Assembly: GCF_902459465.1 (NCBI RefSeq)
Contig: NC_047079.1
Span: 7,068,001-7,132,000 of the forward strand
Origin: Asterias rubens
Taxonomy: Eukaryota
Direction of reading: 5' to 3'
Length of the DNA stretch: 64,000 bases
Shown here piece after piece: positions 1,336 through 47,862 of this stretch. How positions within the stretch are numbered: position 1 is the first letter of the stretch; every line of letters begins with the position of its first letter. Below the pieces are notes generated by a model, which ran no database searches, had not been told where the DNA came from, and saw only the letters and a list, made by a program, of their open reading frames with translations. The translations under genes were made by a program, and so were the position numbers.

Positions 1336-2932
1336 TATTAAAATACAAAGATAAAGACTTCACGAAGTTGTCATCTTGAGGCCAATGCCCTCTTCTTAAA
1401 AGACACAGGTACAATCGAAACTTGTAAGCGTTTCCTTGTTACTTCCTCTATCAATATTTGGGTATAGTCTTTATTTGGGTTGAATAAATTAACATAAATT
1501 TACAGCCGAATGTGAATTATTCTTCTCTCCTTACATTTTAGAAACTAGCGACGTTATTCATTGGATTTAATCAAGTGTAGATAAGGAACGTAACAACCCA
1601 ATTTGAGTAAATCAAAGTTGGGCAGGTCCCACTCTGACTGAAAATTTAAATGTGTAGAAGTTGGGTCAGAAACAAAATGTCTGTTTGGACAAAGTTGGGT
1701 GTAATCAGCCGACCCTGTTGGGTCATCACAATATGAGTTTTTATATGAAATACGTATAATTAATGTATGTGCACTATGATAAAGTAAACATAATTATATT
1801 TAAACAAAGAATAATGGGTTAAATAAGTATTTACAATTCGTGATTTGTGCTTTGCGTATAGGAGTCGTTTAAAACTGCCAACTTTTAAAATAAATAATAA
1901 CTGATTCTACATCGGCTAAACTCAAGCTGCGTGTGGTTTGCCCCGACGGAAATCGTCCCTATAGAAAGGTGTATACTATGAGGTGAACTTACAAACAGTT
2001 ATTTCTAGCAATGGCTGTTCTTCTATATGATGATGATGAAAGACAAGGAGGCAGCATCGAGATGCACATGTCTGTTCGCATGTTGTGCTATGGGTGTGCA
2101 ATTTATATCTAGCCTACGGTTGAGTAAAAGTTCACTGTACCAAAATGATGAGTCTGGCCTATATATTTGGAATAGCATTACCAGGTGTGCGGGGGAAGAG
2201 TTTTAAGATGGGAAGTGGATCACAAAGGTGGCTACTTGGGGCAACGATAGGGGGTCAAGATTGATGGAGCCGGGTTTAAGCTACTCGTCTTACGCAGAAA
2301 AAGGCATTTAAGCTAACCGTATGTATCGGTTGATCGATATTGGTAGATTTTTTTCCACAAGGCAAAATTGTGCAAAAAAGCTATTTCGTTGTTCTGAATA
2401 CATTTCCCCCTTACCTCATCATTGCTCTTAAATAAAAAGTGTAGGTTTGAAATTTTGCACGGTGTAGATAAGATATAAAGTATTTTTGGTTTATACCAAC
2501 AGTTAACAAGTTATTTTGTTTCTAAAATGAGACCGTCCCTAGAGTTGTTTGATACAACCGATGCTTGTAGAGCCTCAGCTCAGAGAAAGATTGCATGGTG
2601 CACACTCTTAAGTTTTCACGTTGAATTTAAAGATACTGTGCCCCCCAACGAACTTTGTCCAACTTGTTATGCAAAACTATTTTGGCAAAAGTTTTGCCTT
2701 GCAGTATAAATTTATTTATTTAAATACTACTTTGCCATTTATCTATTTCATATCTTTGAGATTGACAAAGTAATGCCTTGCAGTGACTAGTTCATCTTTG
2801 AAATACTAGTAGATATTACACGTTTAGACCTTTTACCAAATCCCATACTTGAAAGCACTCGCTTGCCAAAGTTATGCATTTAAACTATTTTACATATTTG
2901 TAAAGAATACTTTACAAATTATGCATTGGAAA

Positions 2933-4606
2933 CTATTTCATCTCTGCCAACGAAGCGTACACAGTGGGCTCCTCCTTTGAGATTGGTCTCTCATTATGTT
3001 TGGATGGATTATTAATTAAATCCAAGTCAGCGTAAACAATTCCCTCCGCCTCAACCTTGGCCCACAAGTGACCCTCATCCCCGGGGGTCGAAGAGGCAGG
3101 TTCAGACGGTTTTGAGCTTCCGGTGGTACTTTTACAAGAGACCTCTTCATGTGGGGTTAAGTCTTTGATGCGGTCCTTATTGACTGAGGTATATATAGCC
3201 TCCTGTTGAGGTTCGTGAGGTGTCACCAAGTGCTCATTTTTACGATGAGGATCCACCGATGCATACACTACAGGGAGTTCCGGTTCTCTCGAGACCTGCC
3301 TGGTACTCATGGCGTATGGAATGGGTCTCTTTGGAGGCTTGTCACCGGTTCCCTTCACGGTCACATCCAGTTCTTTTGAGACCTGCCTCGTGCTCATCGC
3401 ATACGGGATGGGTTTCTTTGGAGGTTTGCCCCCACCAGTACCCTTCTTCTTGCTCTCTTTGTGGACGGAGGCGTAGACAACCCCGGTAGGTTTCTCGGGT
3501 GAGGCTTCGCTACTCCCACGGCGAGGTTGTACGGGCTCCGCGGGTGCAACCTGGTCACTCCCTTGCCGCATACTGAGCGCGTAAGGCACTGGCTTCTTGG
3601 GTGGTGGGGCGCTGCCGTTCTCCACAAGGTGCTGTTCTGGAGGTGGGTGAGAGGAGGGGATGGAACGTCCTAGGCTCCGTCGCATTTTAAACGGTGACAT
3701 TCCCAGCTTCCTGCGGCAAAGAATCAGCGCAGTTATTACACCGAGGAGGATCAGTACCAATATTACGATGACAACGGCGACAATAGTCCCGGTACTGGAG
3801 GACGCTTGCGGTGATGTCGTGGTCGTAAGTGTCGCTGCGAGGTCCTGGGTCACGGCGAGGTCCCGGGTCACGGCGACAGTAGACGGAGTTGTCACCGAGA
3901 GAGGACCAATCTGACAGCTGAGGGTCACATCTGAGAAGTCCACAGCCACGGACGAGCAGTTAAATGTCACTCCATCCTCAGCGGAGCTTACCGGTATCGT
4001 CAGCTGTGTTCCAGTGCCGTTGATCGGGACGCTGGACGGCCAGTCGAGGACGTCATAGGACTCTCCTGTAGAAACGGTGACCACGGCGGCCATCGCGTCC
4101 GACTCAACGGTGCACGAGATTGGGGTACCTGCGAGTAGAGACGCCGGACCTAAGGGTGAACAGGACGGGAAGATATCCGCTGGGTAGACGGTCATGGAAG
4201 CTTGTGCCGTAGAAATAACCGCAAATGTTTGATTATAGACCGTGCAGGTGTAAGTCCCGCTGAAGTCTTGGCTAGCCGGGGTTATAGTCAGAAGATGCAC
4301 TTCAGGTACCGTGTCTGGGCTCGAGGTGCTGATTACGCTCGTGGTATAACGCGGATTAGTGATTTGAGCGAGAAGCTTCCCGTTGAATGTTATAGTGTGG
4401 GTTTGGTTCCTCCAGCTTACAAGGTGGAATCCTGCCTGGAAACGGAGGATCTCACAGCGTAGCGACACCGCGTCACCCTCCCGGGGCTCGGCGGTAAACT
4501 CCGGCAGGACGCTGACGGTTGCTACCGCTGTTTGCGGGAGGACGTAAGGGGCAATGAAGATGATAAAACACAACACCCCGAAACGTACTTCAGATAAAAG
4601 GGCCAT
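2933..4606 (-). CDS. Ig-superfamily type I membrane receptor A (2 Ig domains, Thr-rich stalk, TM, ITIM/ITSM-rich tail), single coding exon, ~557 aa
   Basis: Uninterrupted ORF. The track start (4687) is a TTG; first ATG is 4606 (MALLSEVRFGVLCFIIF, signal peptide). V-type domain C...W...LTI..D.SGTYTC; second Ig domain PSCSPLG..C..C..CQIGPL; TM TIVAVVIVILVLILLGVITALIL then CRRK; tail has VVYASV x2, IVYADL, TVYASL. Confidence 0.9.
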   Translation of the reverse strand: MALLSEVRFGVLCFIIFIAPYVLPQTAVATVSVLPEFTAEPREGDAVSLRCEILRFQAGFHLVSWRNQTHTITFNGKLLAQITNPRYTTSVISTSSPDTVPEVHLLTITPASQDFSGTYTCTVYNQTFAVISTAQASMTVYPADIFPSCSPLGPASLLAGTPISCTVESDAMAAVVTVSTGESYDVLDWPSSVPINGTGTQLTIPVSSAEDGVTFNCSSVAVDFSDVTLSCQIGPLSVTTPSTVAVTRDLAVTQDLAATLTTTTSPQASSSTGTIVAVVIVILVLILLGVITALILCRRKLGMSPFKMRRSLGRSIPSSHPPPEQHLVENGSAPPPKKPVPYALSMRQGSDQVAPAEPVQPRRGSSEASPEKPTGVVYASVHKESKKKGTGGGKPPKKPIPYAMSTRQVSKELDVTVKGTGDKPPKRPIPYAMSTRQVSREPELPVVYASVDPHRKNEHLVTPHEPQQEAIYTSVNKDRIKDLTPHEEVSCKSTTGSSKPSEPASSTPGDEGHLWAKVEAEGIVYADLDLINNPSKHNERPISKEEPTVYASLAEMK

Positions 4607-5799
4607 GTCAACAAATGGCTCAATACAGTTAGCCTTACCCAGTGGTAGTTTTAATCCAAGCAAAAACGTACGTACATTGTTCAACACATTTGTACACAGT
4701 CATCGAAGTTTTCATTGAAGTCCTGCATTGCTGATCGGTGTTTCGAATTGTAATAAAACAGCATTCACTACACCAACACCGATCCTCAACAAAACTTTAA
4801 ATAATATTGGGACAATAAATATATTTCCTACACCTTGAAGATCCGAGTGAACAGTAACGTCCCCAATGTTTCTAAGGGTAATGTCTGCTGATTCTCAATT
4901 TGACAAAAAAGTCTTCAGAATGAAACAAAATATTCGTTTACTTCAGCTTTCCATCAGATTGTCACGATGAGACGGCTTCGGTTGGCCAAACTGCAGGGAT
5001 GTACCATGGAGCAATATGAACCAATACTCCCATGAATCAACACTCAATGTAAAGATTTCTCATGAAGCATCTCCTCACCTGTATATTTACAATCTTTATT
5101 TCCGCAATAAATAAACAATCTAATTCCATTTTCCAGTCCTCACACAGTCACAATCAGAGATTCGTATTCAAAGCTAGTCCTGACGTCATATAAATATCAA
5201 TTACACGATCGTCTCCCCACGGAGTGAATTGTTCCGACTAATCCTGACGGTCACAACACGGAAGAGCTGGTTTATTTCCGTCTTTTATTTCCGGGTTTTT
5301 GAAGTACGGATGGCAAGGTGTACGAAGAGCCTGCTGACCCATCCTAAAGATGATATTCTAGTTAGATCATTGTTAATACTCACTCAGCCAGAGTACTTCT
5401 GAACAAAACGCACTGGGAACTGGATACCATTTTGTTCTCATGCAAATGAACGAACGGCTCTTTTTAGAACCAACCCAAATCATATGGTGTTACCGCAAAC
5501 CTTACTACTATATAGTATTTCCACCATGCAAAGTTTGAACAAGAGAAGATTTCTGTTTGAATACTGGGGAAGTTGTTTTCACTTGAGCTTAGTTTTCAAG
5601 TGTAGATTCGCGCACCATAAACGGGCAAAAGTTGAATTCTTCCCGAGCAGGTTTATCACCCATGGCTGCAATATTGAAACCATTTGACCTTCAGATAACG
5701 TTACAATGCCATTGTGAATTATTTCCATTATTCACTCTTGGTGAGACAGCAGATTCATATACAGTTGTTTTGTCTCGAACCACACAATAATAATTTACA

Positions 5800-14499: not shown

Positions 14500-16347
14500 T
14501 TATGGGTCCAGAAGTGTCTCGTACGGATTTGTGGTTTCAGAATGTACATCGCTATAGATCACAAAGCTATTGGGCAATGTCACATAACGGGCACAGTCTT
14601 CAAAACTGCTGCTGATGTGGCCGTATTTCTTCCGACTTTTCGTGGAGGGTCTAACTCTCCGACACGGCATCGTTCTGCTTCGATCCGAGTCCGCCAAATC
14701 AGCCTCGTAGAGACTGTTGACGACCGTCTCAGCGTAGACGACTAGGGGTAGGCCGCTGGCGCGATCCACGGTAGAGTCAACCCGGGGTTTGTCCGTTAAG
14801 ATCCCGGCTTCGTGATAAATATGCATGGATGTTATGACATTGTTTCGTCTACTCGAATCGGCGGGTAAGGTGGGGTACTTGGTGCTCCATACATTCTGAT
14901 ACCGCGGACTGTGAAACTTCATAGAGATCCTTTTCCGTTTTTGCCTCTGGGGGAACCGTTTTACATAAGCGATGCCGATGATGCCTAACAGGACGAAGAG
15001 GAACAATGCAATGAGGACGATAAAGGCGATACCCGTGGGTCGAGAGAACCAGGCCTGTAAAGGGACAGCCGGTAGGCTTGGTTCGGAAGGCATCGGCCTG
15101 GTGGGTGTAGAGGTAGATTTGGGTAAGTTTTGATCTTTTGACCCGGTTGTCAAAACGGAGTCATCTCGACCTGACGAACTCCATCCCGTAACGAGGCTTG
15201 TTGTGAGTGATTTTAGAGTTGTTGTTTTGGTAGGTTTGGTTGTTGTCGGTGCAACCCTGCGAATCGTGACCGTAGTCGGAGGGGGAACGGTGGCCGGAAC
15301 CACCCGGAGTCTCGAGCTTGCCGTCCGGATTACACCAGCTATAACTGTTTTGCATGTAACGACCATGCCATCATCATCCAGGTCTACGGCTTTGAGCCAC
15401 ATTGAGTCCGCATAACCTCTGTTAGGTACCATAATCCTGTCCGGATCGACGAACGGAACTGTCGTCCATGTTTTTTGTACCTTCGCTTTGGGCACGTGTG
15501 GCGTTACGGTCAGGACGCAGTTTAGTTTAGCCGGGGAACCGACATACACCGTCAAGACTGGTTCCATGGTAAGAGCAATCATTGAACTGCGTGGTACTGG
15601 AACGGTAACAATCGGCCCAATGGTACAAGATGCCGCTCTTGGCTTGGGACTACTTGCCCTGATACGACACGGGTAGCTACTTGCAGCGTACTTTGCAGAC
15701 ATACTCACCGTTAACTCACGGGTAATTATGTCATCGTTTTCGTAGTATGACCAGTTTGCCGGCCGGATCCCGCCGGTCGTGAGGAGCGGGACGGACCCCG
15801 CGACCTCCCGCGTGATCCTCATATCGACGGTAGGGTTCCCGGACTCTGAGAGGCACGCCATTGTCATACGACTGTTTTCGATCACGTAGAACTCACCGGA
15901 CGGGTAACACGTCGGAGGACTGGGGAAGTATAACACAGAGATGCTGGTAATCCCATACGCCACGGCAATGTTTTTAAATCTATCCATAATCTGGCACCGG
16001 TAAGTTCCATCATCTTCCTTGCGTAGCATTGTGACGACGAGGCGGTAACGCGTCCGTCTTGCTCTCGACTCCTCAGACACTAAAAATCTCTCTCTGTAGT
16101 GGGCCTGGACGACGCTCCCCACGCTGACCAGCGTATTCCGGACACTCTCAGCGTCCAAAAATACCCATGTTAGATACTGTGTTGCTTTGTTTAAGTTTTG
16201 GACATTGCACTCGATGGAAGCTCGCGTGCCGAGTTTCTGCTCTACCGGGGTGCCAACATCCACCCTCAGTACGGCATCCACTCCGGAGAAACTGCAAATC
16301 CACATCATAGCGAATAAAGTGACCCATCGGATGGTTAAGGTGAACAT
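14500..16347 (-). CDS. Ig-superfamily type I membrane receptor B (3 Ig domains, Thr/Ser stalk, TM, Tyr-rich tail), single coding exon, ~615 aa
   Basis: Uninterrupted ORF; track start is TTG, first ATG 16347 (MFTLTIRWVTLFAMMW signal peptide). V domain C..W..LVVTMLRKEDDGTYRC; D2 PTCYPSG..C..GNP..C..CTIGPI; D3 C..W..DDDG..C; TM IAFIVLIALFLFVLLGIIGIAYV. Confidence 0.9.
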   Translation of the reverse strand: MFTLTIRWVTLFAMMWICSFSGVDAVLRVDVGTPVEQKLGTRASIECNVQNLNKATQYLTWVFLDAESVRNTLVSVGSVVQAHYRERFLVSEESRARRTRYRLVVTMLRKEDDGTYRCQIMDRFKNIAVAYGITSISVLYFPSPPTCYPSGEFYVIENSRMTMACLSESGNPTVDMRITREVAGSVPLLTTGGIRPANWSYYENDDIITRELTVSMSAKYAASSYPCRIRASSPKPRAASCTIGPIVTVPVPRSSMIALTMEPVLTVYVGSPAKLNCVLTVTPHVPKAKVQKTWTTVPFVDPDRIMVPNRGYADSMWLKAVDLDDDGMVVTCKTVIAGVIRTASSRLRVVPATVPPPTTVTIRRVAPTTTKPTKTTTLKSLTTSLVTGWSSSGRDDSVLTTGSKDQNLPKSTSTPTRPMPSEPSLPAVPLQAWFSRPTGIAFIVLIALFLFVLLGIIGIAYVKRFPQRQKRKRISMKFHSPRYQNVWSTKYPTLPADSSRRNNVITSMHIYHEAGILTDKPRVDSTVDRASGLPLVVYAETVVNSLYEADLADSDRSRTMPCRRVRPSTKSRKKYGHISSSFEDCARYVTLPNSFVIYSDVHSETTNPYETLLDP

Positions 16348-19300
16348 GCTTAGTCCAATTTCACCTCTTAGAGGTCTCCAGAGATAAATAAATCCCAAAG
16401 GATGCTTGTCCCACTTGTAGAGTTAGCTTAGTAAATCTGGCACAACGAAGCTCACCGTCGCCACCATATCGACGCACCGAGCAGGTTCAACATTCCAAGT
16501 GGGCTGAGCTGACTGAGCTACATAAACCATCCCAGTCAGACCTCCATGACAGTGTTCTTCAAAATGTGGAAGTCGCAAAAAGTTGGGTCCCACAAATACC
16601 TCAGCTCCCCGTTAGTCAGACAGCTCCCTGATACGTCTGTCTCTTCACGTAGAAACGCACCACCACCGTCAAGTGCGAACCGTGTCTCAGCAGAGCGCAA
16701 CATACACACAAATTATGGGCATAAACACCGTGTACTAAAATATCGCATTAAGTCACTCGCAGGAGATCCTAGTGAGATGGTGTGTGGCATGCAGCTGTTG
16801 TCAGTGTCGGCTACCATCATCATGTAGACGCACTGATGGATGGGCGACTGGGTGTTACAAGCTGTATTGCACTCCTGAGCAATAGTTGGTTCGGTGCCAG
16901 TGAGTACCGTCCGCGTCGCTACTGGGAGAGGAATTGCTTTAAGTGCTTTGCTTAGATAAAGAGTGTAGATGCGTCAATGAGTGTGAACACTGATGTTTCT
17001 TTACTACTTGTACTATCTAGTAAATGAAGATGCATTATTAAACCACGCCCACTTCAGTCACAGCCCCAGCAACGGTCCCTAGTGACTTGGTCACGTGCGT
17101 ATACGCTCCAATAATCTAACCAAAAGATTACGTCATAATTTGTATACAAAGTACATGTCCAACGCAGCCATTCCATGAATCGGCAGCTTACATTTCTGTT
17201 GTGTTTTAACGTGTCTAGTTTTGGTTGTTTTAAATGTCTTTAAGAAACTTTTAGGCGCACCTTCAAGGGTTAGTCAGCAGAGCGCTTTAAGGGGCGGAGC
17301 TTCATGCTGCGGTTCATGATTAAATCAACATGAACATGTTTGGCGCTAACATAAGTTGTATCTGAGCAGTTACAGAACGTTCACTTTGAATCTCACAGGG
17401 ATCTATGAAAAATCCCGGGTGAGAATTGACCCATTTTGGGGGAACAAGGCCTATAAAGGTCATTTTGAGAACTAACCCTAGGTCCTAAAATTCCCCCATT
17501 GGACACATCATAAGGTATTGTTGCCTTGTCTCAAGTCATTGCAATCATTTGTCTTACTAAATGTTTTTTGCATGAACTAACTCTTTAACTCTTTGCAATC
17601 TTCGAATCGCAGAACAATATCGTCTGGGTCGGAGACTAGTCTGCGTGAAGAACGGCTACACATGTTGCTACAAGTTCTTTGACACAGGATGTGTTTAATG
17701 ACGCATAGGAAAAGATGGAACCGATCTGTCCTATGGTGTGAGACTACTTGTCGAAATGTTATGCAAACAATAGCACATCTAGCAGAATACGAGCTTACTG
17801 CTGACAAAAGTAAAACGTGTGTCACATTACGAAGTGTTTCTGAGAACATTCACTCTTTTTTGTGCATCCCTGTTCTTTCCTTTGTCCCTGTAGTTAAATA
17901 CCTCCCTTAGACTTTGTACAACAGATTTCTTGTGGAGCACTTCAGTCACTAATATTCCTTAATAAAATGTCTTTCTTGTGCAATACTTGTGGTGCTTTAT
18001 AAACTTGTGCGAGCCATGTGATTCTTCTGTCTTATGTCTTTACTGGAAACCTCTTGTTTTCCTTTTTCTGTTTTGTCCTCGGTCTCTATAAGATAGTGAA
18101 TAATTAAATCACGAGTTCCTCACAAATGCAGGGACTTGAAACACCATGTGCACACTAACTACGCCAAGGCACACACAACCTTATAAGGGTCCAGTTTGAA
18201 GGGGCTTGCTTTCGTTGTACTGTTATTCCCATCAAAATGCATTATATTTATTCTGAGAGAAAAATCCCACAATCTCATTACGTCACGTGGTGCATGTGAC
18301 ATTTGGGGGGACTGTTCATGGATCTGGTCACTACAATTTGCAACACCGGCTCAACCGAGAGTCCGACATATTCCCTCCAAGCCATTCATGGACAGGAAAC
18401 ACCCAATTTCTACATACATATAAGGAGGATTACTATCGCTCAACCTCTTTAACGGTGACAGATCCTTGGACTCTAGCCATGTATGTAAGGGGGAGGGGGG
18501 GTCGAGCGAGAGGCAGGGTGCCAATGCCCGAAGACATCTCGACTTCCTCATCTGAAGGAATCAGCCGAGGAGGAACTTAAAAACGGAAGTCTGCTAAAAT
18601 AAAGGGACACTAGTCTGAAACATTCTTCAGGTCTCACAGAACATATGTACACATATATAAATAAACTCAAATGACTTCAGGCCAGGCGTACACCCACTAC
18701 ACGCAAAGGTCAGGCAATTCTAGAAGTTGGTAAATTATTATACATTGAAACGCTTTCTAACATCTTGGACACACATCTTGGATACAAGTTCAAGAACCAT
18801 CGCCAACAGAATGTATCTACGCTCTATTTTTTCTATTTTTAAATCTCGTACAGGTATTACTTGCGTATCATGCATCACCAAGCGCCAAGGTTTAGTCATA
18901 ACTTCTTAATGTTGATTTTAAGGAGGCAGAAATCACATAATTATATCGTCGGATTGAGGTACTTCGTCAAAGAAATGAGAAAACTATCAACAAGACAGAA
19001 CCATAGTAAGACTTTTTCCCGGGTCGTAAGGTTTGCTTTTGATTACATGTCACCCAGAGTTAAAACAAAGTGAAAACCTAAACCCGCTAAGCAGGTGCTG
19101 TATTAACCATCTGACAAATCGAATAGAGTTGGGAATCATTTTTGCGGGAAGCATTTACAAACCGGGGGCTTAAAAGGGAGTTCATAAGGTCTGTTTACCC
19201 CCTTAACATTACAATACACATCAAGTTACTACAAGGCAATTAACTTTACAAACTGCGAGCGTTAGTGTCTTTATTTGATCAAGTGTTGGCAGTTTGGTTT

Positions 19301-29852: not shown

Positions 29853-31748
29853 TCAGTGTGAAAACTGCTGGCTAACTGAGGTGAAATTCGACAGAGACCC
29901 AGTTCCTTGGGAGGCAGTAGATTGACTATCAGACCCTGTAATGTTTATGAGGTTACTAGGGAGCGTCATTGCATAGCATGCCATACGCAATGCAGGCGCG
30001 GGTAGCTCCCCCACGACGTCCCATTCATCTTCAGCAACTGTATAGCAGTGAATGTCTTTTTCTCTATGTCGACTGCGTCCGTTGTAGCCACCTATGATGT
30101 AGATCCTCTGATTGTCTATGACGGCCGAGCCGGCCATACTAAGACCGGTCAGCATTGGGGAGAGGGGTGTCCACTGGTCATTTGAGGGATTGTAACGTTC
30201 AACACTCATCACATCCACTCTGTCACCATATGGGTTCAGATGGTTCCCACCCATGGCGAACATCTGATCACGGACGGCGCACAGCATGTGGAAACCTCGT
30301 TCTGCATTCATGGAGCACCGTTGCGTCCACTCGTTCCGTTGGGGACTGTATTCAAACACAGTCTTCCTGAAATTGTGATTTGCAAACCCACCAGAGATGT
30401 AAAGTTTATCACTGATGACGCAACAAGCATGAGCATACATGGATTCAGGGAGATGCTGGACATAAACCCAGGTATCATTGTTCGGATTGTAAGACTCCAT
30501 CGAAGCAAGGGCGCCTTGCTCATTTTTACCTCCGATAGCAAAGAGTTTACCATCTAGAGCAGCAAGGCCGAAGAAAGCTCTTCGTTGCTGCATTGGGCAC
30601 ACCTGAAGCCAGTTGTTAAATCTTGGGTCGTAGCGATGGACAGTCCCAATACTTTCCTTCCCGTTTGAGGTCAGAGTCACTTGTCCTCCAGCAACATACA
30701 AGAAGTCATTCAAGACAGCAACACTGTGATCCACTCGTCGTAGAGGCATCGATGTTAGATGCTTTAGCTGACAATGAGGTTCGTCCAAAATCATAATATT
30801 GTTACTTACACACTTGTTGGCAAGCTCCCCACCAACAACTAGAATCACCTCGCTGGTGGAGCGCATTCTGGTCCGTGCCGACTGCATAAGATGTTGGCGT
30901 TGGGGTACAAGATGATAATTCAAGGCTTCTAGGAGAAATTCATGACACGTTGCATTCTCCATCATGAAGCTCTCCGACTGCACATGATCTACAAGCTCAT
31001 TCGTTGAGATCAACGGGAATCGGATGTGCTTCATGAGACGAGGTGCAAACTGTTCCCTGGAGTTGCGAGAGTGGTTAATCCACTTGGCTGCCGCTCCAAA
31101 CAACTCCATCTCAGTGCCTGACATCATGCGATCCTGCCGTATGAAATACGTGATTTGTTCCGGGGTCAGAGTTGGGAAATCTCTCGTCGTCGACACTTGG
31201 ACGAAATTTGCTATCACAAAATCCTGCACCGATGAGAGCAGCATTGGAAAGTCATACTTCTCAGCGAGATGAAGTAACTCTACGCAATTCTGCAAACTGA
31301 TTGTTGTGATGAGGTACTGTACGCAGTACTCGGTGACGCGCCTGAAACCAAGTTTAATAGCAGCGTACAGTGTCTTGCGGACATTCTCTATGTTCAACGT
31401 CAGCTGAGACGTGTATGCAAAATGAATTAGCATCTCAAGACCCAGTCTCGGTATGCTAGTACTGATCTGGATGTCCTTGATGTTCTCATTCTCTACAAAC
31501 ATCTTGTGGAAGAAATCACTACAAGATGCAAGGACGATGCGATGAATTGAGAAGTGATGCTCTCCACAAATGAGAGTTCCATCACACAACACTCGCTTCT
31601 TTAGCAATCCATCGAGTTGCTTCAGCATCTCACCGCCATGCTCTGCGCACTGGTAAACCCTCGTGGGTGGGGGCGCTGTGCTATTCCAGAAAGAGAAACT
31701 GCGTTCTAACGGACTGGTTGGAATTTGTGAAGAGACTTTTGAAGCCAT
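29853..31748 (-). CDS. BTB-BACK-Kelch protein (KLHL9/13/14/26-like group, putative CUL3 adaptor), single coding exon, 631 aa
   Basis: BTB (LCD..L....F..HRIVLASCSDFF), BACK and six GG-Y/W kelch repeats (RYDPRFNNW, GGNHL..DVMSVERYNP). ATG has an in-frame TAA three codons upstream. Likely non-coding upstream exons at 32676-32747 and from 33500. Confidence 0.93.
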   Translation of the reverse strand: MASKVSSQIPTSPLERSFSFWNSTAPPPTRVYQCAEHGGEMLKQLDGLLKKRVLCDGTLICGEHHFSIHRIVLASCSDFFHKMFVENENIKDIQISTSIPRLGLEMLIHFAYTSQLTLNIENVRKTLYAAIKLGFRRVTEYCVQYLITTISLQNCVELLHLAEKYDFPMLLSSVQDFVIANFVQVSTTRDFPTLTPEQITYFIRQDRMMSGTEMELFGAAAKWINHSRNSREQFAPRLMKHIRFPLISTNELVDHVQSESFMMENATCHEFLLEALNYHLVPQRQHLMQSARTRMRSTSEVILVVGGELANKCVSNNIMILDEPHCQLKHLTSMPLRRVDHSVAVLNDFLYVAGGQVTLTSNGKESIGTVHRYDPRFNNWLQVCPMQQRRAFFGLAALDGKLFAIGGKNEQGALASMESYNPNNDTWVYVQHLPESMYAHACCVISDKLYISGGFANHNFRKTVFEYSPQRNEWTQRCSMNAERGFHMLCAVRDQMFAMGGNHLNPYGDRVDVMSVERYNPSNDQWTPLSPMLTGLSMAGSAVIDNQRIYIIGGYNGRSRHREKDIHCYTVAEDEWDVVGELPAPALRMACYAMTLPSNLINITGSDSQSTASQGTGSLSNFTSVSQQFSH

Positions 31749-43365: not shown

Positions 43366-43483
43366 TACATGTATATTGAAACCTCACCACGCATTGCCTC
43401 AAAAACATCCCATTTAGCACTAAATTGTGAAACTAAACAAAATTCATCTTTTTCGGTTACATAACGCAGGTATAATAGTAACC

Positions 43484-44101
43484 ATGGCAACTGGAAGGCT
43501 TTCACAAAACACCCGCTCCAATGGGTTGTTGATCCTGGTCTTATCAACTGTGATCACCATGAGCTCAGCACTGGAATATGCTTCGAATCTCACAGTTTCT
43601 TCCAAGACGGCCAACACCGCGACTCTTACCTGGACATCAGCAGCCAGTGGTGGTAATGCCTCAAGCTACATCGTCTCTGTTGTCTTAGACACCAGCGTTC
43701 TCGAGAATGTGACCATCTCGACCATAGCTACTAACACGCACACAATCACCGGGCTGACCTACTCGACCTTCTACACCGTGCTGGTGTACACCTACGATTC
43801 GACCGGGCAGAGCACTGGGGAAGCAACCTCTGTTTCCTTCTGGACTAAATACACCTCATGGAACACGAAGTTCATCGGAGCGTTGGGTGTGATTGGCTTC
43901 ATCATTGTCACTTTATTGACGATGATAATCTTGAAGAGTAAGTGCCTCCCTCCCGATCCGAAGCCTATGGTTATGGATGATGAGAAGCTTGTGGTGGATG
44001 GGGAAGGTGTTAATGATGAACTACCCAGCGAGGAGGGTAACAAAGAGGACAAGGAGCAGCCGAAAAGTCCGATCAAAGACAGAGATATAGCAATATTCTA
44101 A
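43484..44101 (+). CDS. Small type I membrane protein with one fibronectin type III domain, single coding exon, 205 aa
   Basis: ATG 43484 lies 14 nt after an acceptor (cag 43467-69). Signal peptide; FN3 (LTV..TANTATLTW..Y...TITGL..ST.YTV.V); TM FIGALGVIGFIIVTLLTMIIL; acidic tail. Probable non-coding exon 1 ends at donor 42712. Confidence 0.85.
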   Translation: MATGRLSQNTRSNGLLILVLSTVITMSSALEYASNLTVSSKTANTATLTWTSAASGGNASSYIVSVVLDTSVLENVTISTIATNTHTITGLTYSTFYTVLVYTYDSTGQSTGEATSVSFWTKYTSWNTKFIGALGVIGFIIVTLLTMIILKSKCLPPDPKPMVMDDEKLVVDGEGVNDELPSEEGNKEDKEQPKSPIKDRDIAIF

Positions 44102-45667: not shown

Positions 45668-46318
45668 TTAAATATTATTTGACAAATCTGCGTCCATTGG
45701 TTGGGGCTCCTCACCATCTGGCTCATCGTAGGGGGCGCTAGAGATGGGTCTACCAGAGGCATTCTTCTTCTTTCGGGCCTTGCCTTTCTTCTTTGAGTGT
45801 CTCTGGAAGGTCTGCCAGCCTTGCTCAAGGAGCTCCGTTCGCTTGTAGGCCAACACCCTGTTTCGACTCTTTGAGACCACGAAATCCAAAATGGCGAACG
45901 TCACCAAGCAGATAAGGAGGAATAAGCCCGCTACGATGGCAAGAGATGTCGTTGAACCCATAGGTGTTGAGAACTGAGCACAGCCAACTTCCGGTACTTC
46001 CGGTGCAGGGACAAGGGTCGCCACGCATGCGTTGTAGCCTCTCAAGTCGTCCAAATCTGGCAGGCTGTACATTCTCGATGAAACATTGTGAATGTCTTCA
46101 ATCATGTTCATTGCAAAGTCACCTGAGTTGGTGAGACTAAATCCAGTCAGATTAGAGGATTGCGGGATGCCCAATTCCCACCGTATGGTGGCGCTATACG
46201 CTGTGATGTTAACAACGGTTACTGTTAAGGCGGAGTGTACAGTACGGAAGCTCAGAGAGGTCATGAGTATCGTTAGCTGCACGGCATAGTATGCACAGAA
46301 GGTCACGGCAGACGCCAT
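45668..46318 (-). CDS. Second small single-FN3 type I membrane protein (Cys-containing FN3 like the juxtamembrane FN3 of LRR-Ig-FN3 proteins), 216 aa
   Basis: Acceptor ttttacag at 46385-87, ATG 46318. Signal peptide; VTVVNITAYSATIRW..L.DL...YNACV...CAQFST; TM LAIVAGLFLLICLVTFAIL; polybasic tail with YDEP. Confidence 0.8.
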   Translation of the reverse strand: MASAVTFCAYYAVQLTILMTSLSFRTVHSALTVTVVNITAYSATIRWELGIPQSSNLTGFSLTNSGDFAMNMIEDIHNVSSRMYSLPDLDDLRGYNACVATLVPAPEVPEVGCAQFSTPMGSTTSLAIVAGLFLLICLVTFAILDFVVSKSRNRVLAYKRTELLEQGWQTFQRHSKKKGKARKKKNASGRPISSAPYDEPDGEEPQPMDADLSNNI

Positions 46319-47862
46319 GATTGCCAAGTTTGGATTGTCCGCTAATGGCCACCGTCCCTGTCCACTTAAAGTACTCTTAAAGTTCTGTAAAAAAAAAATA
46401 ATAAAAAAAATTGAACAACAAATAATTATGTTTGCCAATAACTGTGAATTATGTGCTATTTTCACGATACTCTTAATTTCGTGCTTTTACACAAGATTTC
46501 TTGGAATTTAGATTTTTATATTGTATCGGTAACTTACGATTTGTTTAATCTTTGACCTTTAGAGCTTCAGCCCAAAAGTAAAACCCCACAAGTAACCAAA
46601 AGCTCTCTCGATGGACACTGACTACGTAGTATGTAGCGAGCACACTTATGCAAATTCCAATCGTGCATTTATCATTTATACGAATTCAATCTTTGTTATT
46701 AAAAAAGAAAAAAAGAAAGAAAAAAAAATCTTTACACCACATCAGAGTGTAAAACACACTCTTTTGTTATTTCAAAATCCTTGGTTCAGAACTGTCCATG
46801 CTTCAGTGCATGCATAGTACGGCTCAATGTCAACTTTAAATGATACATGCAGGCGTGTATGAAACACACTGTACGTGTAGGCGTGTGAGTACAATGCGAG
46901 AAGTCAACTGTGAATAACTGAATGGCAACGCATTTAATCTTGCGACAAATGTTTTGTTACTCTAGTTTTGTTACTCTAGTCAAGGTGACATTTTAATACG
47001 ATTTCTGCATGACTAGCATTGTCATGGCGAATCACTTTGTGTATTTTTCTTAACACTTGTTTCGTATTGTAATTTCAGTTTAACAATTATTGACATGAGT
47101 AGTAGCCTATTTAAACCTTTGTTTGCCATCCTCGTATATATAGAGAAGGTCGAATTAAACTTTGGGATCATGAAGGTTCGGGGGGGGGGGACACTGCCAC
47201 CTTCCGTTAAACTGGTGTCAAATGCCATTGTATATGCGAGTTTTGTCAACATCCAATAAAAATATCCAAGGATGTCACATTTTCTACGCAGGTTGTTCAG
47301 TCCTACAATTTGATGACATCTACAAGAAAGTCATTGAATTTACTTTTTGAGATGCGCAAACAAATCCGTTGTTGTTGTGGTTCGTATGTTTCAATTTTCT
47401 CTCTGAAAGAGTATAAAATCAAAAGACAGGTTCAATCATCAAATGTGAGTTTCAGGCTTAACATTTCCCCTGCTTTCACAAGTACAGCGCATCATAGGGA
47501 CATCACACGGTGATAATATGTGCTATATAAGAATGGTTTTATTATTAGTACTACGTTCTATTGGATAATGAGGGCATTGTCATGTCGATCATAGAGACCC
47601 TAATTTCCATGTTATTTTAATGATGATATGAATATGCATGAACTGAGTGTAGTTTCCTGTCTTTTGCAATTTGAAGTCCTAATGCGGACTGGATAACGGA
47701 AACGTGCGGCCTGAAGGAAAACAACTCGAAATGGCAAACCACACTGTGTTTTATTTAGATCAGCAATTTCCCTGTTTCGATTTGGGCTGACGAAACACAT
47801 AGCTCACCAAATGAATGTAAAACACCAACCGAGACTTGAAACCCTTCAGTTTCATGTATTCT

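What the first reader, a model, noticed from the sequence alone, without database searches (positions are those of the whole stretch)
2933..3719. Receptor A tail: ITIM/ITSM array interleaved with repeated PPK[KR]P[VI]PYA[LM] modules
Seen: VVYASV x2 and IVYADL fit the ITIM consensus [ILVS]xYxx[LV]; TVYASL at the C-terminus is ITSM-like; AIYTSV is a near match. PPK[KR]P[VI]PYA[LM] occurs three times, two copies from an 87-bp in-frame duplication (3291/3378). Established: tandem ITIM/ITSM pairs recruit SHP1/2 (PD-1, PZR, SIRPa), and Pro-basic motifs bind SH3 domains. Inference: an inhibitory receptor whose SH3 sites dock a kinase beside its target tyrosines, with the tail growing by exon-internal duplication.
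Basis: partly seen in the sequence, partly recalled or inferred. Interest (0 to 1): 0.7.

Follow-up and report, generated by a model that had tools for sequence, protein, structure and literature searches.

The report
Sea-star Ig receptor with SHP-docking tail
A single-exon, expressed sea-star gene encodes a two-Ig-domain surface receptor whose tail carries eight conserved tyrosine motifs, ending in the same two-tyrosine site that vertebrate receptors such as SIRP-alpha use to recruit SHP phosphatases, plus a conserved proline-lysine-tyrosine module copied three times in this lineage; it is a new member of a known kind, not a new kind.

Summary
ORF 2933-4606(-) encodes a 557-aa type I receptor: signal peptide, two Ig-like domains, uncharged TM and a 260-aa tail. 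The tail holds VVYASV x2, IVYADL, TVYASL, AIYTSV and three PPK[KR]P[VI]PYA[LM] modules. Two of the modules come from an 87-nt tandem repeat.

The motifs are not chance. There are 4 ITIM/ITSM fits against 0.38 expected, and 7 of 8 Tyr are followed by Ala. They are conserved in the Patiria and Acanthaster orthologues: 8 tail Tyr each, 6 invariant columns, last pair always 25 apart, last Tyr 7 from the C-terminus.

The end pair hhYA[DE]LDL-x(22-27)-xxYAxh recurs in paralogues and in two hemichordate proteins. It mirrors the SIRP-alpha SHP2-binding peptide. The genome carries an SHP-type gene (tandem SH2 plus PTP).

Module 1 is ancestral. Modules 2 and 3 are a 48-aa insertion absent from both valvatid orthologues; a ~96%-alike relative also has both copies. 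Both copies are under strong purifying selection (dN about 0.03, dS about 1.5). The exact module occurs nowhere else in the genome.

The SH3-site reading is weak, because no class I/II consensus is met. TVYASL is not a strict ITSM. "Inhibitory" is untested.

The scan found this receptor family before on other DNA of this genome (s1-150347).

The parts
2933..4606 (-). Complete intronless CDS of receptor A (557 aa plus stop). The Met at 4606 is followed by a hydrophobic signal peptide.
   Evidence: ORF listing. A run-X3 contig of 3712 nt is colinear over 2700-4900. Orthologues align end to end.
4187..4528 (-). Ig-like domain 1 (V/I-set-like), about aa 27-140
   Evidence: Pfam ig 22.6 bits (over the 21.8 cut-off); Ig_3 and V-set score below their cut-offs. 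AlphaFold2 model with pLDDT 87.
3887..4174 (-). Ig-like domain 2, about aa 145-240. Three family-invariant cysteines (C149, C217, C231) sit in the motifs FPSCSP, FNCSS and CQIGPL; a fourth Cys (ISCTV) is kept in the three orthologues.
   Evidence: Invariant columns C149, C217 and C231 in the 29-sequence alignment. Cys in ISCTV read. Model. Fold hits are generic two-Ig cell-surface proteins.
3716..3784 (-). Transmembrane helix (aa 275-297) without any charged residue
   Evidence: Hydropathy scan; coordinates
2933..3715 (-). Cytoplasmic tail, 260 aa, with 8 Tyr (plus the stop codon)
3557..3604 (-). Module 1, PPKKPVPYALSMRQGS. This is the ancestral copy, kept in Patiria and Acanthaster.
   Evidence: Three-way alignment
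3374..3424 (-). Module 2, PPKKPIPYAMSTRQVSK, which lies in repeat copy 3366-3433
3287..3337 (-). Module 3, PPKRPIPYAMSTRQVSR, which lies in repeat copy 3279-3346
3279..3452 (-). Two 87-nt tandem units, a 48-aa insertion absent from both valvatid orthologues (this genome's lineage); nt identity is 81% over 68 nt
   Evidence: The gap appears in both valvatid orthologues. Both units are present in a ~96%-alike relative (X1 record 2).
3464..3481 (-). VVYASV (ITIM fit 1). The orthologues have G[GQ][IV]YA[KI]V here.
3254..3271 (-). VVYASV (ITIM fit 2). The orthologues have V[HQ]YASV here.
3182..3199 (-). AIYTSV (near fit). The orthologues have AHYAAVNK here.
3023..3040 (-). IVYADL(DL), the first member of the conserved terminal pair
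2948..2965 (-). TVYASL, the second member of the terminal pair. It lies 25 residues after the first Tyr and 7 residues from the C-terminus in all three orthologues.
1470..1475 (-). AATAAA hexamer at the inferred 3' end of the transcript contig (3' UTR of about 1.46 kb)
   Evidence: Sequence. The start of the X3 contig maps to about window 1468.

Best explanation
Receptor A is an expressed, intronless gene of a sea star, probably Asterias rubens. It encodes a type I membrane protein with two Ig-like domains. Its 260-aa tail is a multi-phosphotyrosine docking platform.

Proposed mechanism (inferred): ligand-driven clustering lets a Src-family kinase phosphorylate the hxYAx[VL] tyrosines. The C-terminal pair, G-[IL]-[IV]-Y-A-[DE]-L-D-L then 25 residues then P-T-V-Y-A-x-L, engages the tandem SH2 domains of the SHP-type phosphatase encoded elsewhere on the same chromosome. 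The upstream YAxV sites add avidity or recruit further SH2 proteins.

The PPKKPxPYAxSxRxxS module is a separate, selectively maintained docking or phospho-site of unknown partner. It was single in the ancestor and was triplicated in this genome's lineage by in-exon duplications. This raised the number of that site from 1 to 3 without changing the total of 8 tyrosines.

Shown: gene structure, expression, motif presence, conservation, purifying selection, and the presence of an SHP-type gene.
Inferred: phosphorylation, SHP binding, and the sign of the signal.
For: Gene and expression:
- ORF and motifs were read. The two-Ig model has pLDDT 87.
- In run X3, a 3712-nt contig at depth 21.7 comes from a 152-Mb run. 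That run is about 0.36x of a 417.6-Mb genome, so the contig must be RNA.
- The contig is colinear with 2700-4900 and ends at an AATAAA. Runs X4-X6 hold 91-96% of the words.

Orthologues and conservation:
- The orthologues are Patiria XP_038077646.1 and an ORF at L054:13913-15427 in Acanthaster. The orthologue of window receptor B lies upstream of the latter on the same strand, which shows synteny.
- The three-way alignment gives 8 tail Tyr per species and 6 invariant Tyr columns. Invariant residues number 24/48 near Tyr against 39/139 elsewhere (Fisher P=0.008).
- The last pair is spaced 25 residues apart and the last Tyr is 7 from the end in all three.
- The terminal pair is present in 19 of 206 family proteins, with spacing 22-27. 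These include Ptychodera XP_070568247.1 (spacing 25) and a Glandiceps nephrin-like protein.

Known SHP ligands with the same residues:
- The SIRP-alpha peptide ITYADLNL...TEYASI (24 apart) is phosphorylated by Src and activates Shp2 (PMC5589908).
- pYASI and pYASV are listed as C-SH2 ligands, and pYxDLDL as N-SH2 ligands, of SHP2 (bioRxiv 10.1101/2022.06.29.498118).

SHP-type gene and module selection:
- SH2 exons lie at C19:5152365-5154075(+) and PTP exons at C19:5163284-5166471(+).
- Between modules 2 and 3, the 17-codon core has 8 synonymous differences and 1 conservative (K/R) difference. This gives dN 0.03-0.05 and dS 1.4-2.0.
Against: - No phosphorylation or binding data exist. The tools cannot model phosphotyrosine.
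- YxxPhi motifs also fit AP-2 sorting signals.
- Three of the eight Tyr (the modules) have Ser at +3 and fit no SH2 class that I know.
- The first VVYASV has Gly at -2 in Patiria and Gln at -2 in Acanthaster, and the Tyr next to module 1 in valvatids is lost in this genome. Individual upstream sites therefore turn over.
- The expressing cell type is unknown, so an immune role is an assumption.
Confidence: 0.6

Rival explanations
1. One reading: the PPK[KR]P[VI]PYA[LM] modules are SH3-binding sites that dock a Src-family or Csk-type kinase next to the ITIM tyrosines.
For: - Each module has a PxxP core (PKKP) in a basic setting.
- Related modules in paralogues, KP[TRE]PYKP in L029, L045, L036 and L026 and in Acanthaster P0047, do fit class I [RK]xxPxxP.
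- The SIRP-alpha double-motif linker also contains KGKKPAP.
Against: - In receptor A and its orthologues neither class I nor class II is met. The residue at the last P position is L, M or V, and there is no basic residue in register (reading).
- Conservation extends over Y-A-[LMV]-S-x-R-x-x-S, which an SH3 groove would not read.
- The consensus patterns are permissive in Pro/Lys-rich tails.
Confidence: 0.15
2. The module is itself a phospho-switch site. Its Tyr (and the RxxS serine four to six residues later) are phosphorylated and bind an SH2/PTB or other reader distinct from SHP. Copy number tunes that output.
For: - The Tyr is invariant in all five copies across three species. The R-x-x-S that follows it is kept as well.
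- dN/dS is about 0.02-0.03 between copies 2 and 3.
- The -2 position is always Val or Ile, as at the other tail tyrosines.
Against: - The module fits no known SH2, PTB, WW or 14-3-3 class by my reading.
- One paralogue copy (L006) has Cys in place of the Tyr, so the Tyr is not always needed in related modules.
Confidence: 0.35
3. The tyrosine motifs are mainly YxxPhi endocytic or sorting signals (AP-2 mu2), and the protein is an adhesion molecule with regulated turnover rather than an SH2-docking receptor.
For: - YASV, YTSV, YADL and YASL all fit YxxPhi.
- The nearest folds are adhesion-type two-Ig proteins such as CADM, IGSF5 and TMIGD1.
Against: - AP-2 does not explain the near-universal Ala at +1 or the hydrophobic -2.
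- It does not explain the DLDL extension or the fixed 25-residue spacing.
- It does not explain eight copies, or the match to experimentally defined SHP2 ligands.
Confidence: 0.1
4. The array is a chance or low-complexity product of a fast-evolving disordered tail, without function.
For: - Tail length varies (260 aa against 189-191 aa), with several indels and a 45-nt indel between individuals.
Against: - Shuffle tests argue against chance.
- The motifs are conserved across two sea-star orders and hemichordates.
- Selection is strongly purifying, and the gene is expressed.
Confidence: 0.02

Closest known systems
SIRP-alpha (SHPS-1) cytoplasmic double ITIM ('BTAM')
   Same: - It is a type I Ig receptor.
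- Its tail has four tyrosines as two pairs of YADL(N/D)(L/M) followed about 24 residues later by xEYAS[IV]. One pair ends a few residues before the C-terminus.
- Its linker contains a KKPAP stretch.
- The peptide is phosphorylated by Src and activates Shp2 (PMC5589908). pYASI and pYASV are SHP2 C-SH2 ligands.
- Receptor A ends in IVYADLDL, then 25 residues, then TVYASL plus 7 residues.
   Different: - No sequence homology is detectable outside the short motifs. The ectodomain has two Ig domains, not V-C1-C1.
- Receptor A has eight tyrosines, three PPKKPxPYA modules, and an intronless gene.
- Whether the likeness is common descent or convergence is open.
PZR (MPZL1) and PECAM-1 type SHP-2 docking receptors
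   Same: These are Ig-domain adhesion-type receptors with two hxYxx[LIV] motifs about 22 residues apart near the C-terminus that bind SHP-2. PZR has YAQL and YADI (from my own knowledge, not checked here).
   Different: PZR has one Ig domain and a short tail. Neither protein has the module repeats. Their output is often positive signalling, which is why 'inhibitory' cannot be assumed for receptor A.
Sea-star/ambulacrarian intronless two-Ig receptor family (undescribed; earlier scan note s1-150347)
   Same: - Receptor A shares the ectodomain hallmarks FPxCSPxG, FxC and CxIGP.
- In the long-tail subfamily it also shares the terminal hhYA[DE]LDL...xxYAxh pair.
- At least 58 paralogues exist in this genome, and relatives occur in Patiria, Acanthaster, Asterias amurensis and Ptychodera.
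   Different: - Receptor A is the only member in the genome with the PPK[KR]P[VI]PYA module.
- Other long-tail members carry KPxPYKPK modules or 4-7 tandem KPxPPA[IV]YAQVNK units.
- Still others have ITAM-like, TYYQPV/TDYEAV or no tails.
CD3-epsilon proline-rich sequence abutting the first ITAM tyrosine (Nck SH3.1 site)
   Same: This is an analogy from my own knowledge only.
   Different: The pattern differs (PxxPxxDY in CD3-epsilon against PxxPxPY here). No test was possible, so this is a lead and not a classification.

Membership tests
ITIM-bearing Ig-superfamily receptor (SIRP-alpha/PZR/PECAM-1 type) | Type I membrane protein with Ig-like ectodomain | tested here: met
   Pfam ig 22.6 bits (cut-off 21.8). 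Two-Ig AlphaFold2 model with pLDDT 87. Two-Ig fold hits. TM helix.
ITIM-bearing Ig-superfamily receptor (SIRP-alpha/PZR/PECAM-1 type) | At least one [ILVS]xYxx[LVI] in the cytoplasmic tail | tested here: met
   Three fits (VVYASV x2, IVYADL). 0.38 ITIM/ITSM fits are expected by shuffling.
ITIM-bearing Ig-superfamily receptor (SIRP-alpha/PZR/PECAM-1 type) | Two motifs about 20-30 residues apart, able to span tandem SH2 domains | tested here: met
   Y525-Y550 are 25 residues apart in all three orthologues. The spacing is 22-27 in 19 family members. SIRP-alpha has 24.
ITIM-bearing Ig-superfamily receptor (SIRP-alpha/PZR/PECAM-1 type) | No charged residue in the TM segment (not an adaptor-coupled activating receptor) | tested here: met
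   TM aa 275-297 contains only I, V, A, L, G, T and C.
ITIM-bearing Ig-superfamily receptor (SIRP-alpha/PZR/PECAM-1 type) | Motif tyrosines conserved in orthologues | tested here: met
   Six Tyr columns are invariant in the window genome's receptor, Patiria and Acanthaster.
ITIM-bearing Ig-superfamily receptor (SIRP-alpha/PZR/PECAM-1 type) | An SHP-type (tandem SH2 plus PTP) phosphatase available in the organism | tested here: met
   SH2 exons at C19:5152365-5154075(+) are followed by PTP exons at C19:5163284-5166471(+). The single-gene architecture is inferred from the exon order.
ITIM-bearing Ig-superfamily receptor (SIRP-alpha/PZR/PECAM-1 type) | Tyrosine phosphorylation and phospho-dependent SHP/SHIP binding with an inhibitory output | not testable with these tools
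   This needs biochemistry. No phosphotyrosine modelling is available.
ITSM (TxYxx[VI]) | Thr at -2 and Val or Ile at +3 | tested here: not met
   TVYASL here and TVYAEL in both orthologues. Thr at -2 is met, but +3 is Leu in all three. The motif is ITSM-like only.
Canonical SH3 ligand | Class I [RK]xxPxxP or class II PxxPx[RK] | tested here: not met
   The modules read K-P-P-K-[KR]-P-[IV]-P-Y-A-[LM]. Only a bare PxxP (PKKP) is present (reading). Paralogue modules KPxPYKP do fit class I.
ITAM | YxxL/I followed 6-8 residues later by YxxL/I | tested here: not met
   The smallest Tyr-Tyr spacing in the tail is 17 residues. The ITAM regex gave 0 hits.
WW-domain ligand (PPxY) | P-P-x-Y | tested here: not met
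   The module has P-[IV]-P-Y, so Pro sits at -3 and -1 rather than -3 and -2.

The most novel reading that the evidence does not exclude
The 16-residue block PPKKPxPYAxSxRxxS is a previously undescribed docking motif, possibly a proline-anchored Tyr/Ser phospho-switch. It is related to the KPxPYKPK modules of sister receptors. Its copy number (1 in valvatid sea stars, 3 in this genome's lineage) has been tuned by in-exon duplication under strong purifying selection. This would point to a signalling partner in ambulacrarian ITIM receptors that has no described vertebrate counterpart.
Probability: 0.25. Interest if true: 0.6.

Novelty: new member of a known kind. Interest (0 to 1): 0.4.

Why it matters
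Inhibitory-type Ig receptors with SHP-docking double motifs are central to vertebrate immune checkpoints. In echinoderms they are essentially undescribed: two full-text searches for ITIM with echinoderm or sea-star terms brought up nothing describing such a receptor.

This gene shows that the exact grammar, hhYADLDL then about 25 residues then xxYAxh at the C-terminus, is fixed across sea-star orders and hemichordates. It gives a compact, expressed, intronless test case for three questions:
- Does SHP recruitment by such tails predate vertebrates?
- What does the conserved PPKKPxPYA module bind?
- How does tandem duplication tune motif dosage in disordered tails?

It is one member of a large clustered family with ITIM-like, ITAM-like and tail-less forms. 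That family deserves study as a possible paired-receptor system.

Tried and rejected
- A tail-only word-based homology search (residues 300-557) gave nothing at E<=0.01. This is uninformative, because the Patiria orthologue aligns over the tail.
- Fold searches with the ectodomain model returned only generic two-Ig proteins: antibodies, Dscam, DIP/Dpr, CADM, IGSF5, TMIGD1. No specific vertebrate family can be named.
- NCBI's Acanthaster 'TFIID subunit 12-like' protein (P0002) first looked like the orthologue with a short tail. tblastn showed that it is a neighbouring paralogue and that the true orthologue is the ORF at L054:13913-15427.
- I recall the SHP-1 SH2 consensus LxpYAxL / (V/I/L)xpYAx(L/V). 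A literature search found no paper printing it, so that point rests on memory and is not used as evidence. I used the SHP2 ligand lists instead.
- Asterias amurensis proteins P0003, P0060 and P0028 are only 72-80% identical to their best counterparts here. They are not safe 1:1 orthologues, and the A. amurensis orthologue of receptor A was not shown by the tools.
- Complex prediction was not run. The claim concerns phosphotyrosine-dependent binding, which that tool cannot represent, and an SHP SH2 query would have had to be spliced by hand.
- ITAM, PPxY, class I/II SH3 and 14-3-3 readings of the module were considered and do not fit.
Full report
**1. What is in the sequence**

Window 2933-4687 on the minus strand is one open frame.
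- From the Met at 4606 it encodes 557 aa.
- The parts in order are a hydrophobic signal peptide, an Ig domain, a second Cys-containing Ig-like domain, a Ser/Thr stalk, a TM helix and a tail.
- The Ig domain scores 22.6 bits against Pfam ig (over the cut-off); Ig_3 and V-set score below theirs.
- The stalk holds a small 18-nt tandem repeat at 3837-3876.
- The TM helix has no charged residue (aa 275-297, window 3716-3784).
- The cytoplasmic tail is 260 aa.
- An AlphaFold2 model of the ectodomain, built on 29 family sequences, has mean pLDDT 87 and shows two beta-sandwich domains.
- Foldseek against PDB and Swiss-Prot models finds only generic two-Ig surface proteins.

**2. The observation**

- VVYASV twice, IVYADL, TVYASL and AIYTSV.
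- PPKKPVPYAL, PPKKPIPYAM and PPKRPIPYAM.

The last two modules lie in a direct repeat, 3279-3346 / 3366-3433. The period is 87 nt (29 codons) and the nt identity is 81%.

The array is not what the tail's composition would give:
- 200,000 shuffles average 0.38 ITIM/ITSM fits against 4 observed (P about 2e-4).
- Seven of the eight tail tyrosines are followed by Ala and the eighth by Thr. No shuffle reached this.

The back-translated module pattern occurs three times in the whole 417.6-Mb genome, all three here, and zero times in the reversed control.

**3. Is it a real, expressed gene?**

One contig of run X3 is 3712 nt long and lies colinear on 2700-4900 with a single base difference.
- The run holds only 152 million letters, about 0.36x of this genome, yet the contig depth is 21.7. 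It must therefore be RNA (inference).
- Its start maps to about window 1468, directly after an AATAAA at 1470-1475 on the minus strand.
- This fits an unspliced mRNA with a 3' UTR of about 1.46 kb.
- Three more runs of the same study hold 91-96% of the sampled words.

The coding region is therefore one exon, so 'exon-internal duplication' is the right description.

**4. Orthologues**

The only close database protein is Patiria miniata XP_038077646.1, with 40-47% identity over the full length.

In Acanthaster planci the annotated neighbour P0002 (named TFIID subunit 12-like) is a paralogue.
- The true orthologue is an ORF at L054:13913-15427.
- It lies downstream of the orthologue of window receptor B on the same strand, as in the window. 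Synteny therefore supports orthology.

The three-way alignment shows a diverged tail with conserved islands at the tyrosines.
- Each species has eight tail tyrosines and six columns are invariant.
- Invariant residues are 24 of 48 within -2..+3 of a Tyr against 39 of 139 elsewhere (Fisher P=0.008).
- The last two tyrosines are 25 residues apart, and the last is 7 residues from the C-terminus, in all three.

**5. The terminal pair**

The pattern is G-[IL]-[IV]-Y-A-[DE]-L-D-L, then 22-27 residues, then x-x-x-Y-A-x-[LIV], a few residues from the C-terminus. It recurs in 19 of 206 family proteins examined, including:
- About ten long-tail paralogues of this genome.
- Proteins of Patiria, Acanthaster and Asterias amurensis.
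- The hemichordate Ptychodera flava XP_070568247.1, which again has a spacing of 25.
- A nephrin-like protein of the hemichordate Glandiceps, which carries VVYAELDL, then 23 residues, then TEYATI.

This is the grammar of experimentally defined SHP ligands.
- The SIRP-alpha peptide ITYADLNL...(24)...TEYASI is phosphorylated by Src and activates Shp2 (PMC5589908).
- pYASI and pYASV of SHPS-1 are listed as high-affinity ligands of the SHP2 C-SH2.
- pY-x-D-L-D-L peptides (IRS-1, Gab1) are listed as ligands of the N-SH2 (bioRxiv 10.1101/2022.06.29.498118).

The genome has the reader protein. SH2 exons at C19:5152365-5154075(+) are followed on the same strand by PTP exons at C19:5163284-5166471. That is the tandem-SH2-plus-PTP order, which to my knowledge only SHP-type phosphatases have (inference from exon order).

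**6. The PPK[KR]P[VI]PYA[LM] modules**

History:
- Module 1 is ancestral. Patiria has PP-KPVPYALSKRHPS and Acanthaster has PPKKPVPYAVSKRHPS at the same place, about 40 residues after the TM.
It reads PPKKPxPYA[LMV]SxRxxS.
- Modules 2 and 3 sit in a 48-aa insertion that both valvatid orthologues lack.
- Contigs of a ~96%-alike relative (X1) cover both repeat units without a gap. The duplication therefore predates that split.

Selection:
- Between modules 2 and 3 the 17-codon core has 8 synonymous differences and one K/R change.
- This gives dN 0.03-0.05 and dS 1.4-2.0. The chance of at most 1 nonsynonymous change among 9 is about 3e-4.
- The duplication is therefore old, and both copies are held by purifying selection.

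Related modules in paralogues:
- KP[TRE]PYKP[KN] occurs twice in L029, L045 and L036, and once in L026 and in Acanthaster P0047.
- PKKPAPYKSK occurs in L006, beside a PKKPAPCKPK copy.

SH3 reading:
- The paralogue versions fit the class I SH3 pattern [RK]xxPxxP.
- Receptor A's own modules fit neither class I nor class II. They have only the bare PKKP.
- They also do not fit PPxY.
- The SH3 reading is therefore possible but weak.
- I rate a dedicated Tyr (and RxxS Ser) phospho-site with an unknown reader as somewhat more likely. Neither reading could be tested.

**7. Tail growth by duplication is a family habit**

- The valvatid orthologues have a tandem EPAHYAAV pair.
- L003 and L007 carry 4-7 tandem KPxPPA[IV]YAQVNK units.
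- The tail of receptor A is 260 aa against 189-191 aa in valvatids.
- Transcript contigs of X3 and X7 carry 45 extra in-frame nt at about 3097 relative to the window (record coordinates).

**8. Family context**

At least 58 intronless paralogues exist in the genome. They are clustered on C19 (6.94-7.13 and 11.78-12.22 Mb), C13 and C1. Their tails are of several kinds:
- The long ITIM-pair type.
- TYYQPV/TDYEAV pairs.
- Short ITAM-like tails.
- Almost no tail.

My own data (genome size, nearest relatives) are compatible with that, but I did not verify the species.

**9. Verdict**

- This is a new member of a known kind: an ITIM / double-motif Ig receptor that most likely docks an SHP-type phosphatase. 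It lies in a lineage where such receptors are undescribed.
- The added feature is a conserved, lineage-amplified Pro-Lys-Tyr module of unknown partner.
- Whether the receptor is inhibitory, what it binds outside the cell, and which cells express it are all open.

Noticed in passing
window about 3096-3098: Contigs of runs X3 and X7 each carry 45 extra nt (43 unmatched letters plus a 2-nt overlap) relative to the window, inside the tail between AIYTSV and IVYADL. X1 has a loose end at the same place. This looks like an in-frame 15-codon indel between individuals, or an assembly difference. The inserted letters were not shown by the tool.
   Followed up: partly
window 3277-3440 and 3535-3601 (run X7): X7 holds near-identical contigs and also contigs about 85% alike at similar depth. 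One of the latter skips 3277-3440 (exactly modules 2 and 3) and 3535-3601. No such close paralogue exists in G000 (the next best is 36% aa identity). It could be a very divergent allele, a paralogue missing from the assembly, or another species in the sample.
   Followed up: no
L054:13913-15427 and L054:10001-11164 (Acanthaster planci DF978538.1): The true Acanthaster orthologue of receptor A is an ORF that did not appear among the called genes of the fetched locus. The neighbouring paralogue is annotated 'transcription initiation factor TFIID subunit 12-like', which is a misnomer caused by its Pro/Ser-rich stalk.
   Followed up: partly
window 14500-16398 (-) and L054:1108-3012: Receptor B has a 46%-identical Acanthaster orthologue in conserved order with receptor A. 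Its tail motifs are conserved too (HIYHEA, VVYAETVVNSLYEAD, a C-terminal NPYE[ST]L).
   Followed up: partly
G000 C19:6.94-7.13 Mb, C19:11.78-12.22 Mb, C13:15.10-15.13 Mb, C1:11.40-11.41 Mb: There are at least 58 intronless paralogues in clusters. Their tails are ITIM-pair, TYYQPV/TDYEAV, ITAM-like (Yxx[LI]x6-9Yxx[LI]) or nearly absent. This is the layout of a paired activating/inhibitory receptor family.
   Followed up: partly
G000 C19:5152365-5166471 (+): A tandem SH2 plus PTP exon series, i.e. an SHP-type phosphatase gene, lies about 1.9 Mb from the receptor cluster on the same chromosome.
   Followed up: partly
window 29853-31748 (-): A 631-aa BTB-BACK-Kelch (KLHL-type) protein is encoded as a single uninterrupted ORF, possibly a retrogene.
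   Followed up: no
window 3837-3876: An 18-nt tandem repeat (2.2 copies, 95% matches) lies in the extracellular stalk and encodes VTRDLAVTQDLA. The orthologues have a 3-5 aa gap here.
   Followed up: no
window 43427-44101 (+) and 45668-46465 (-): Two small single-FN3, single-TM proteins are encoded by intronless ORFs in divergent orientation.
   Followed up: no
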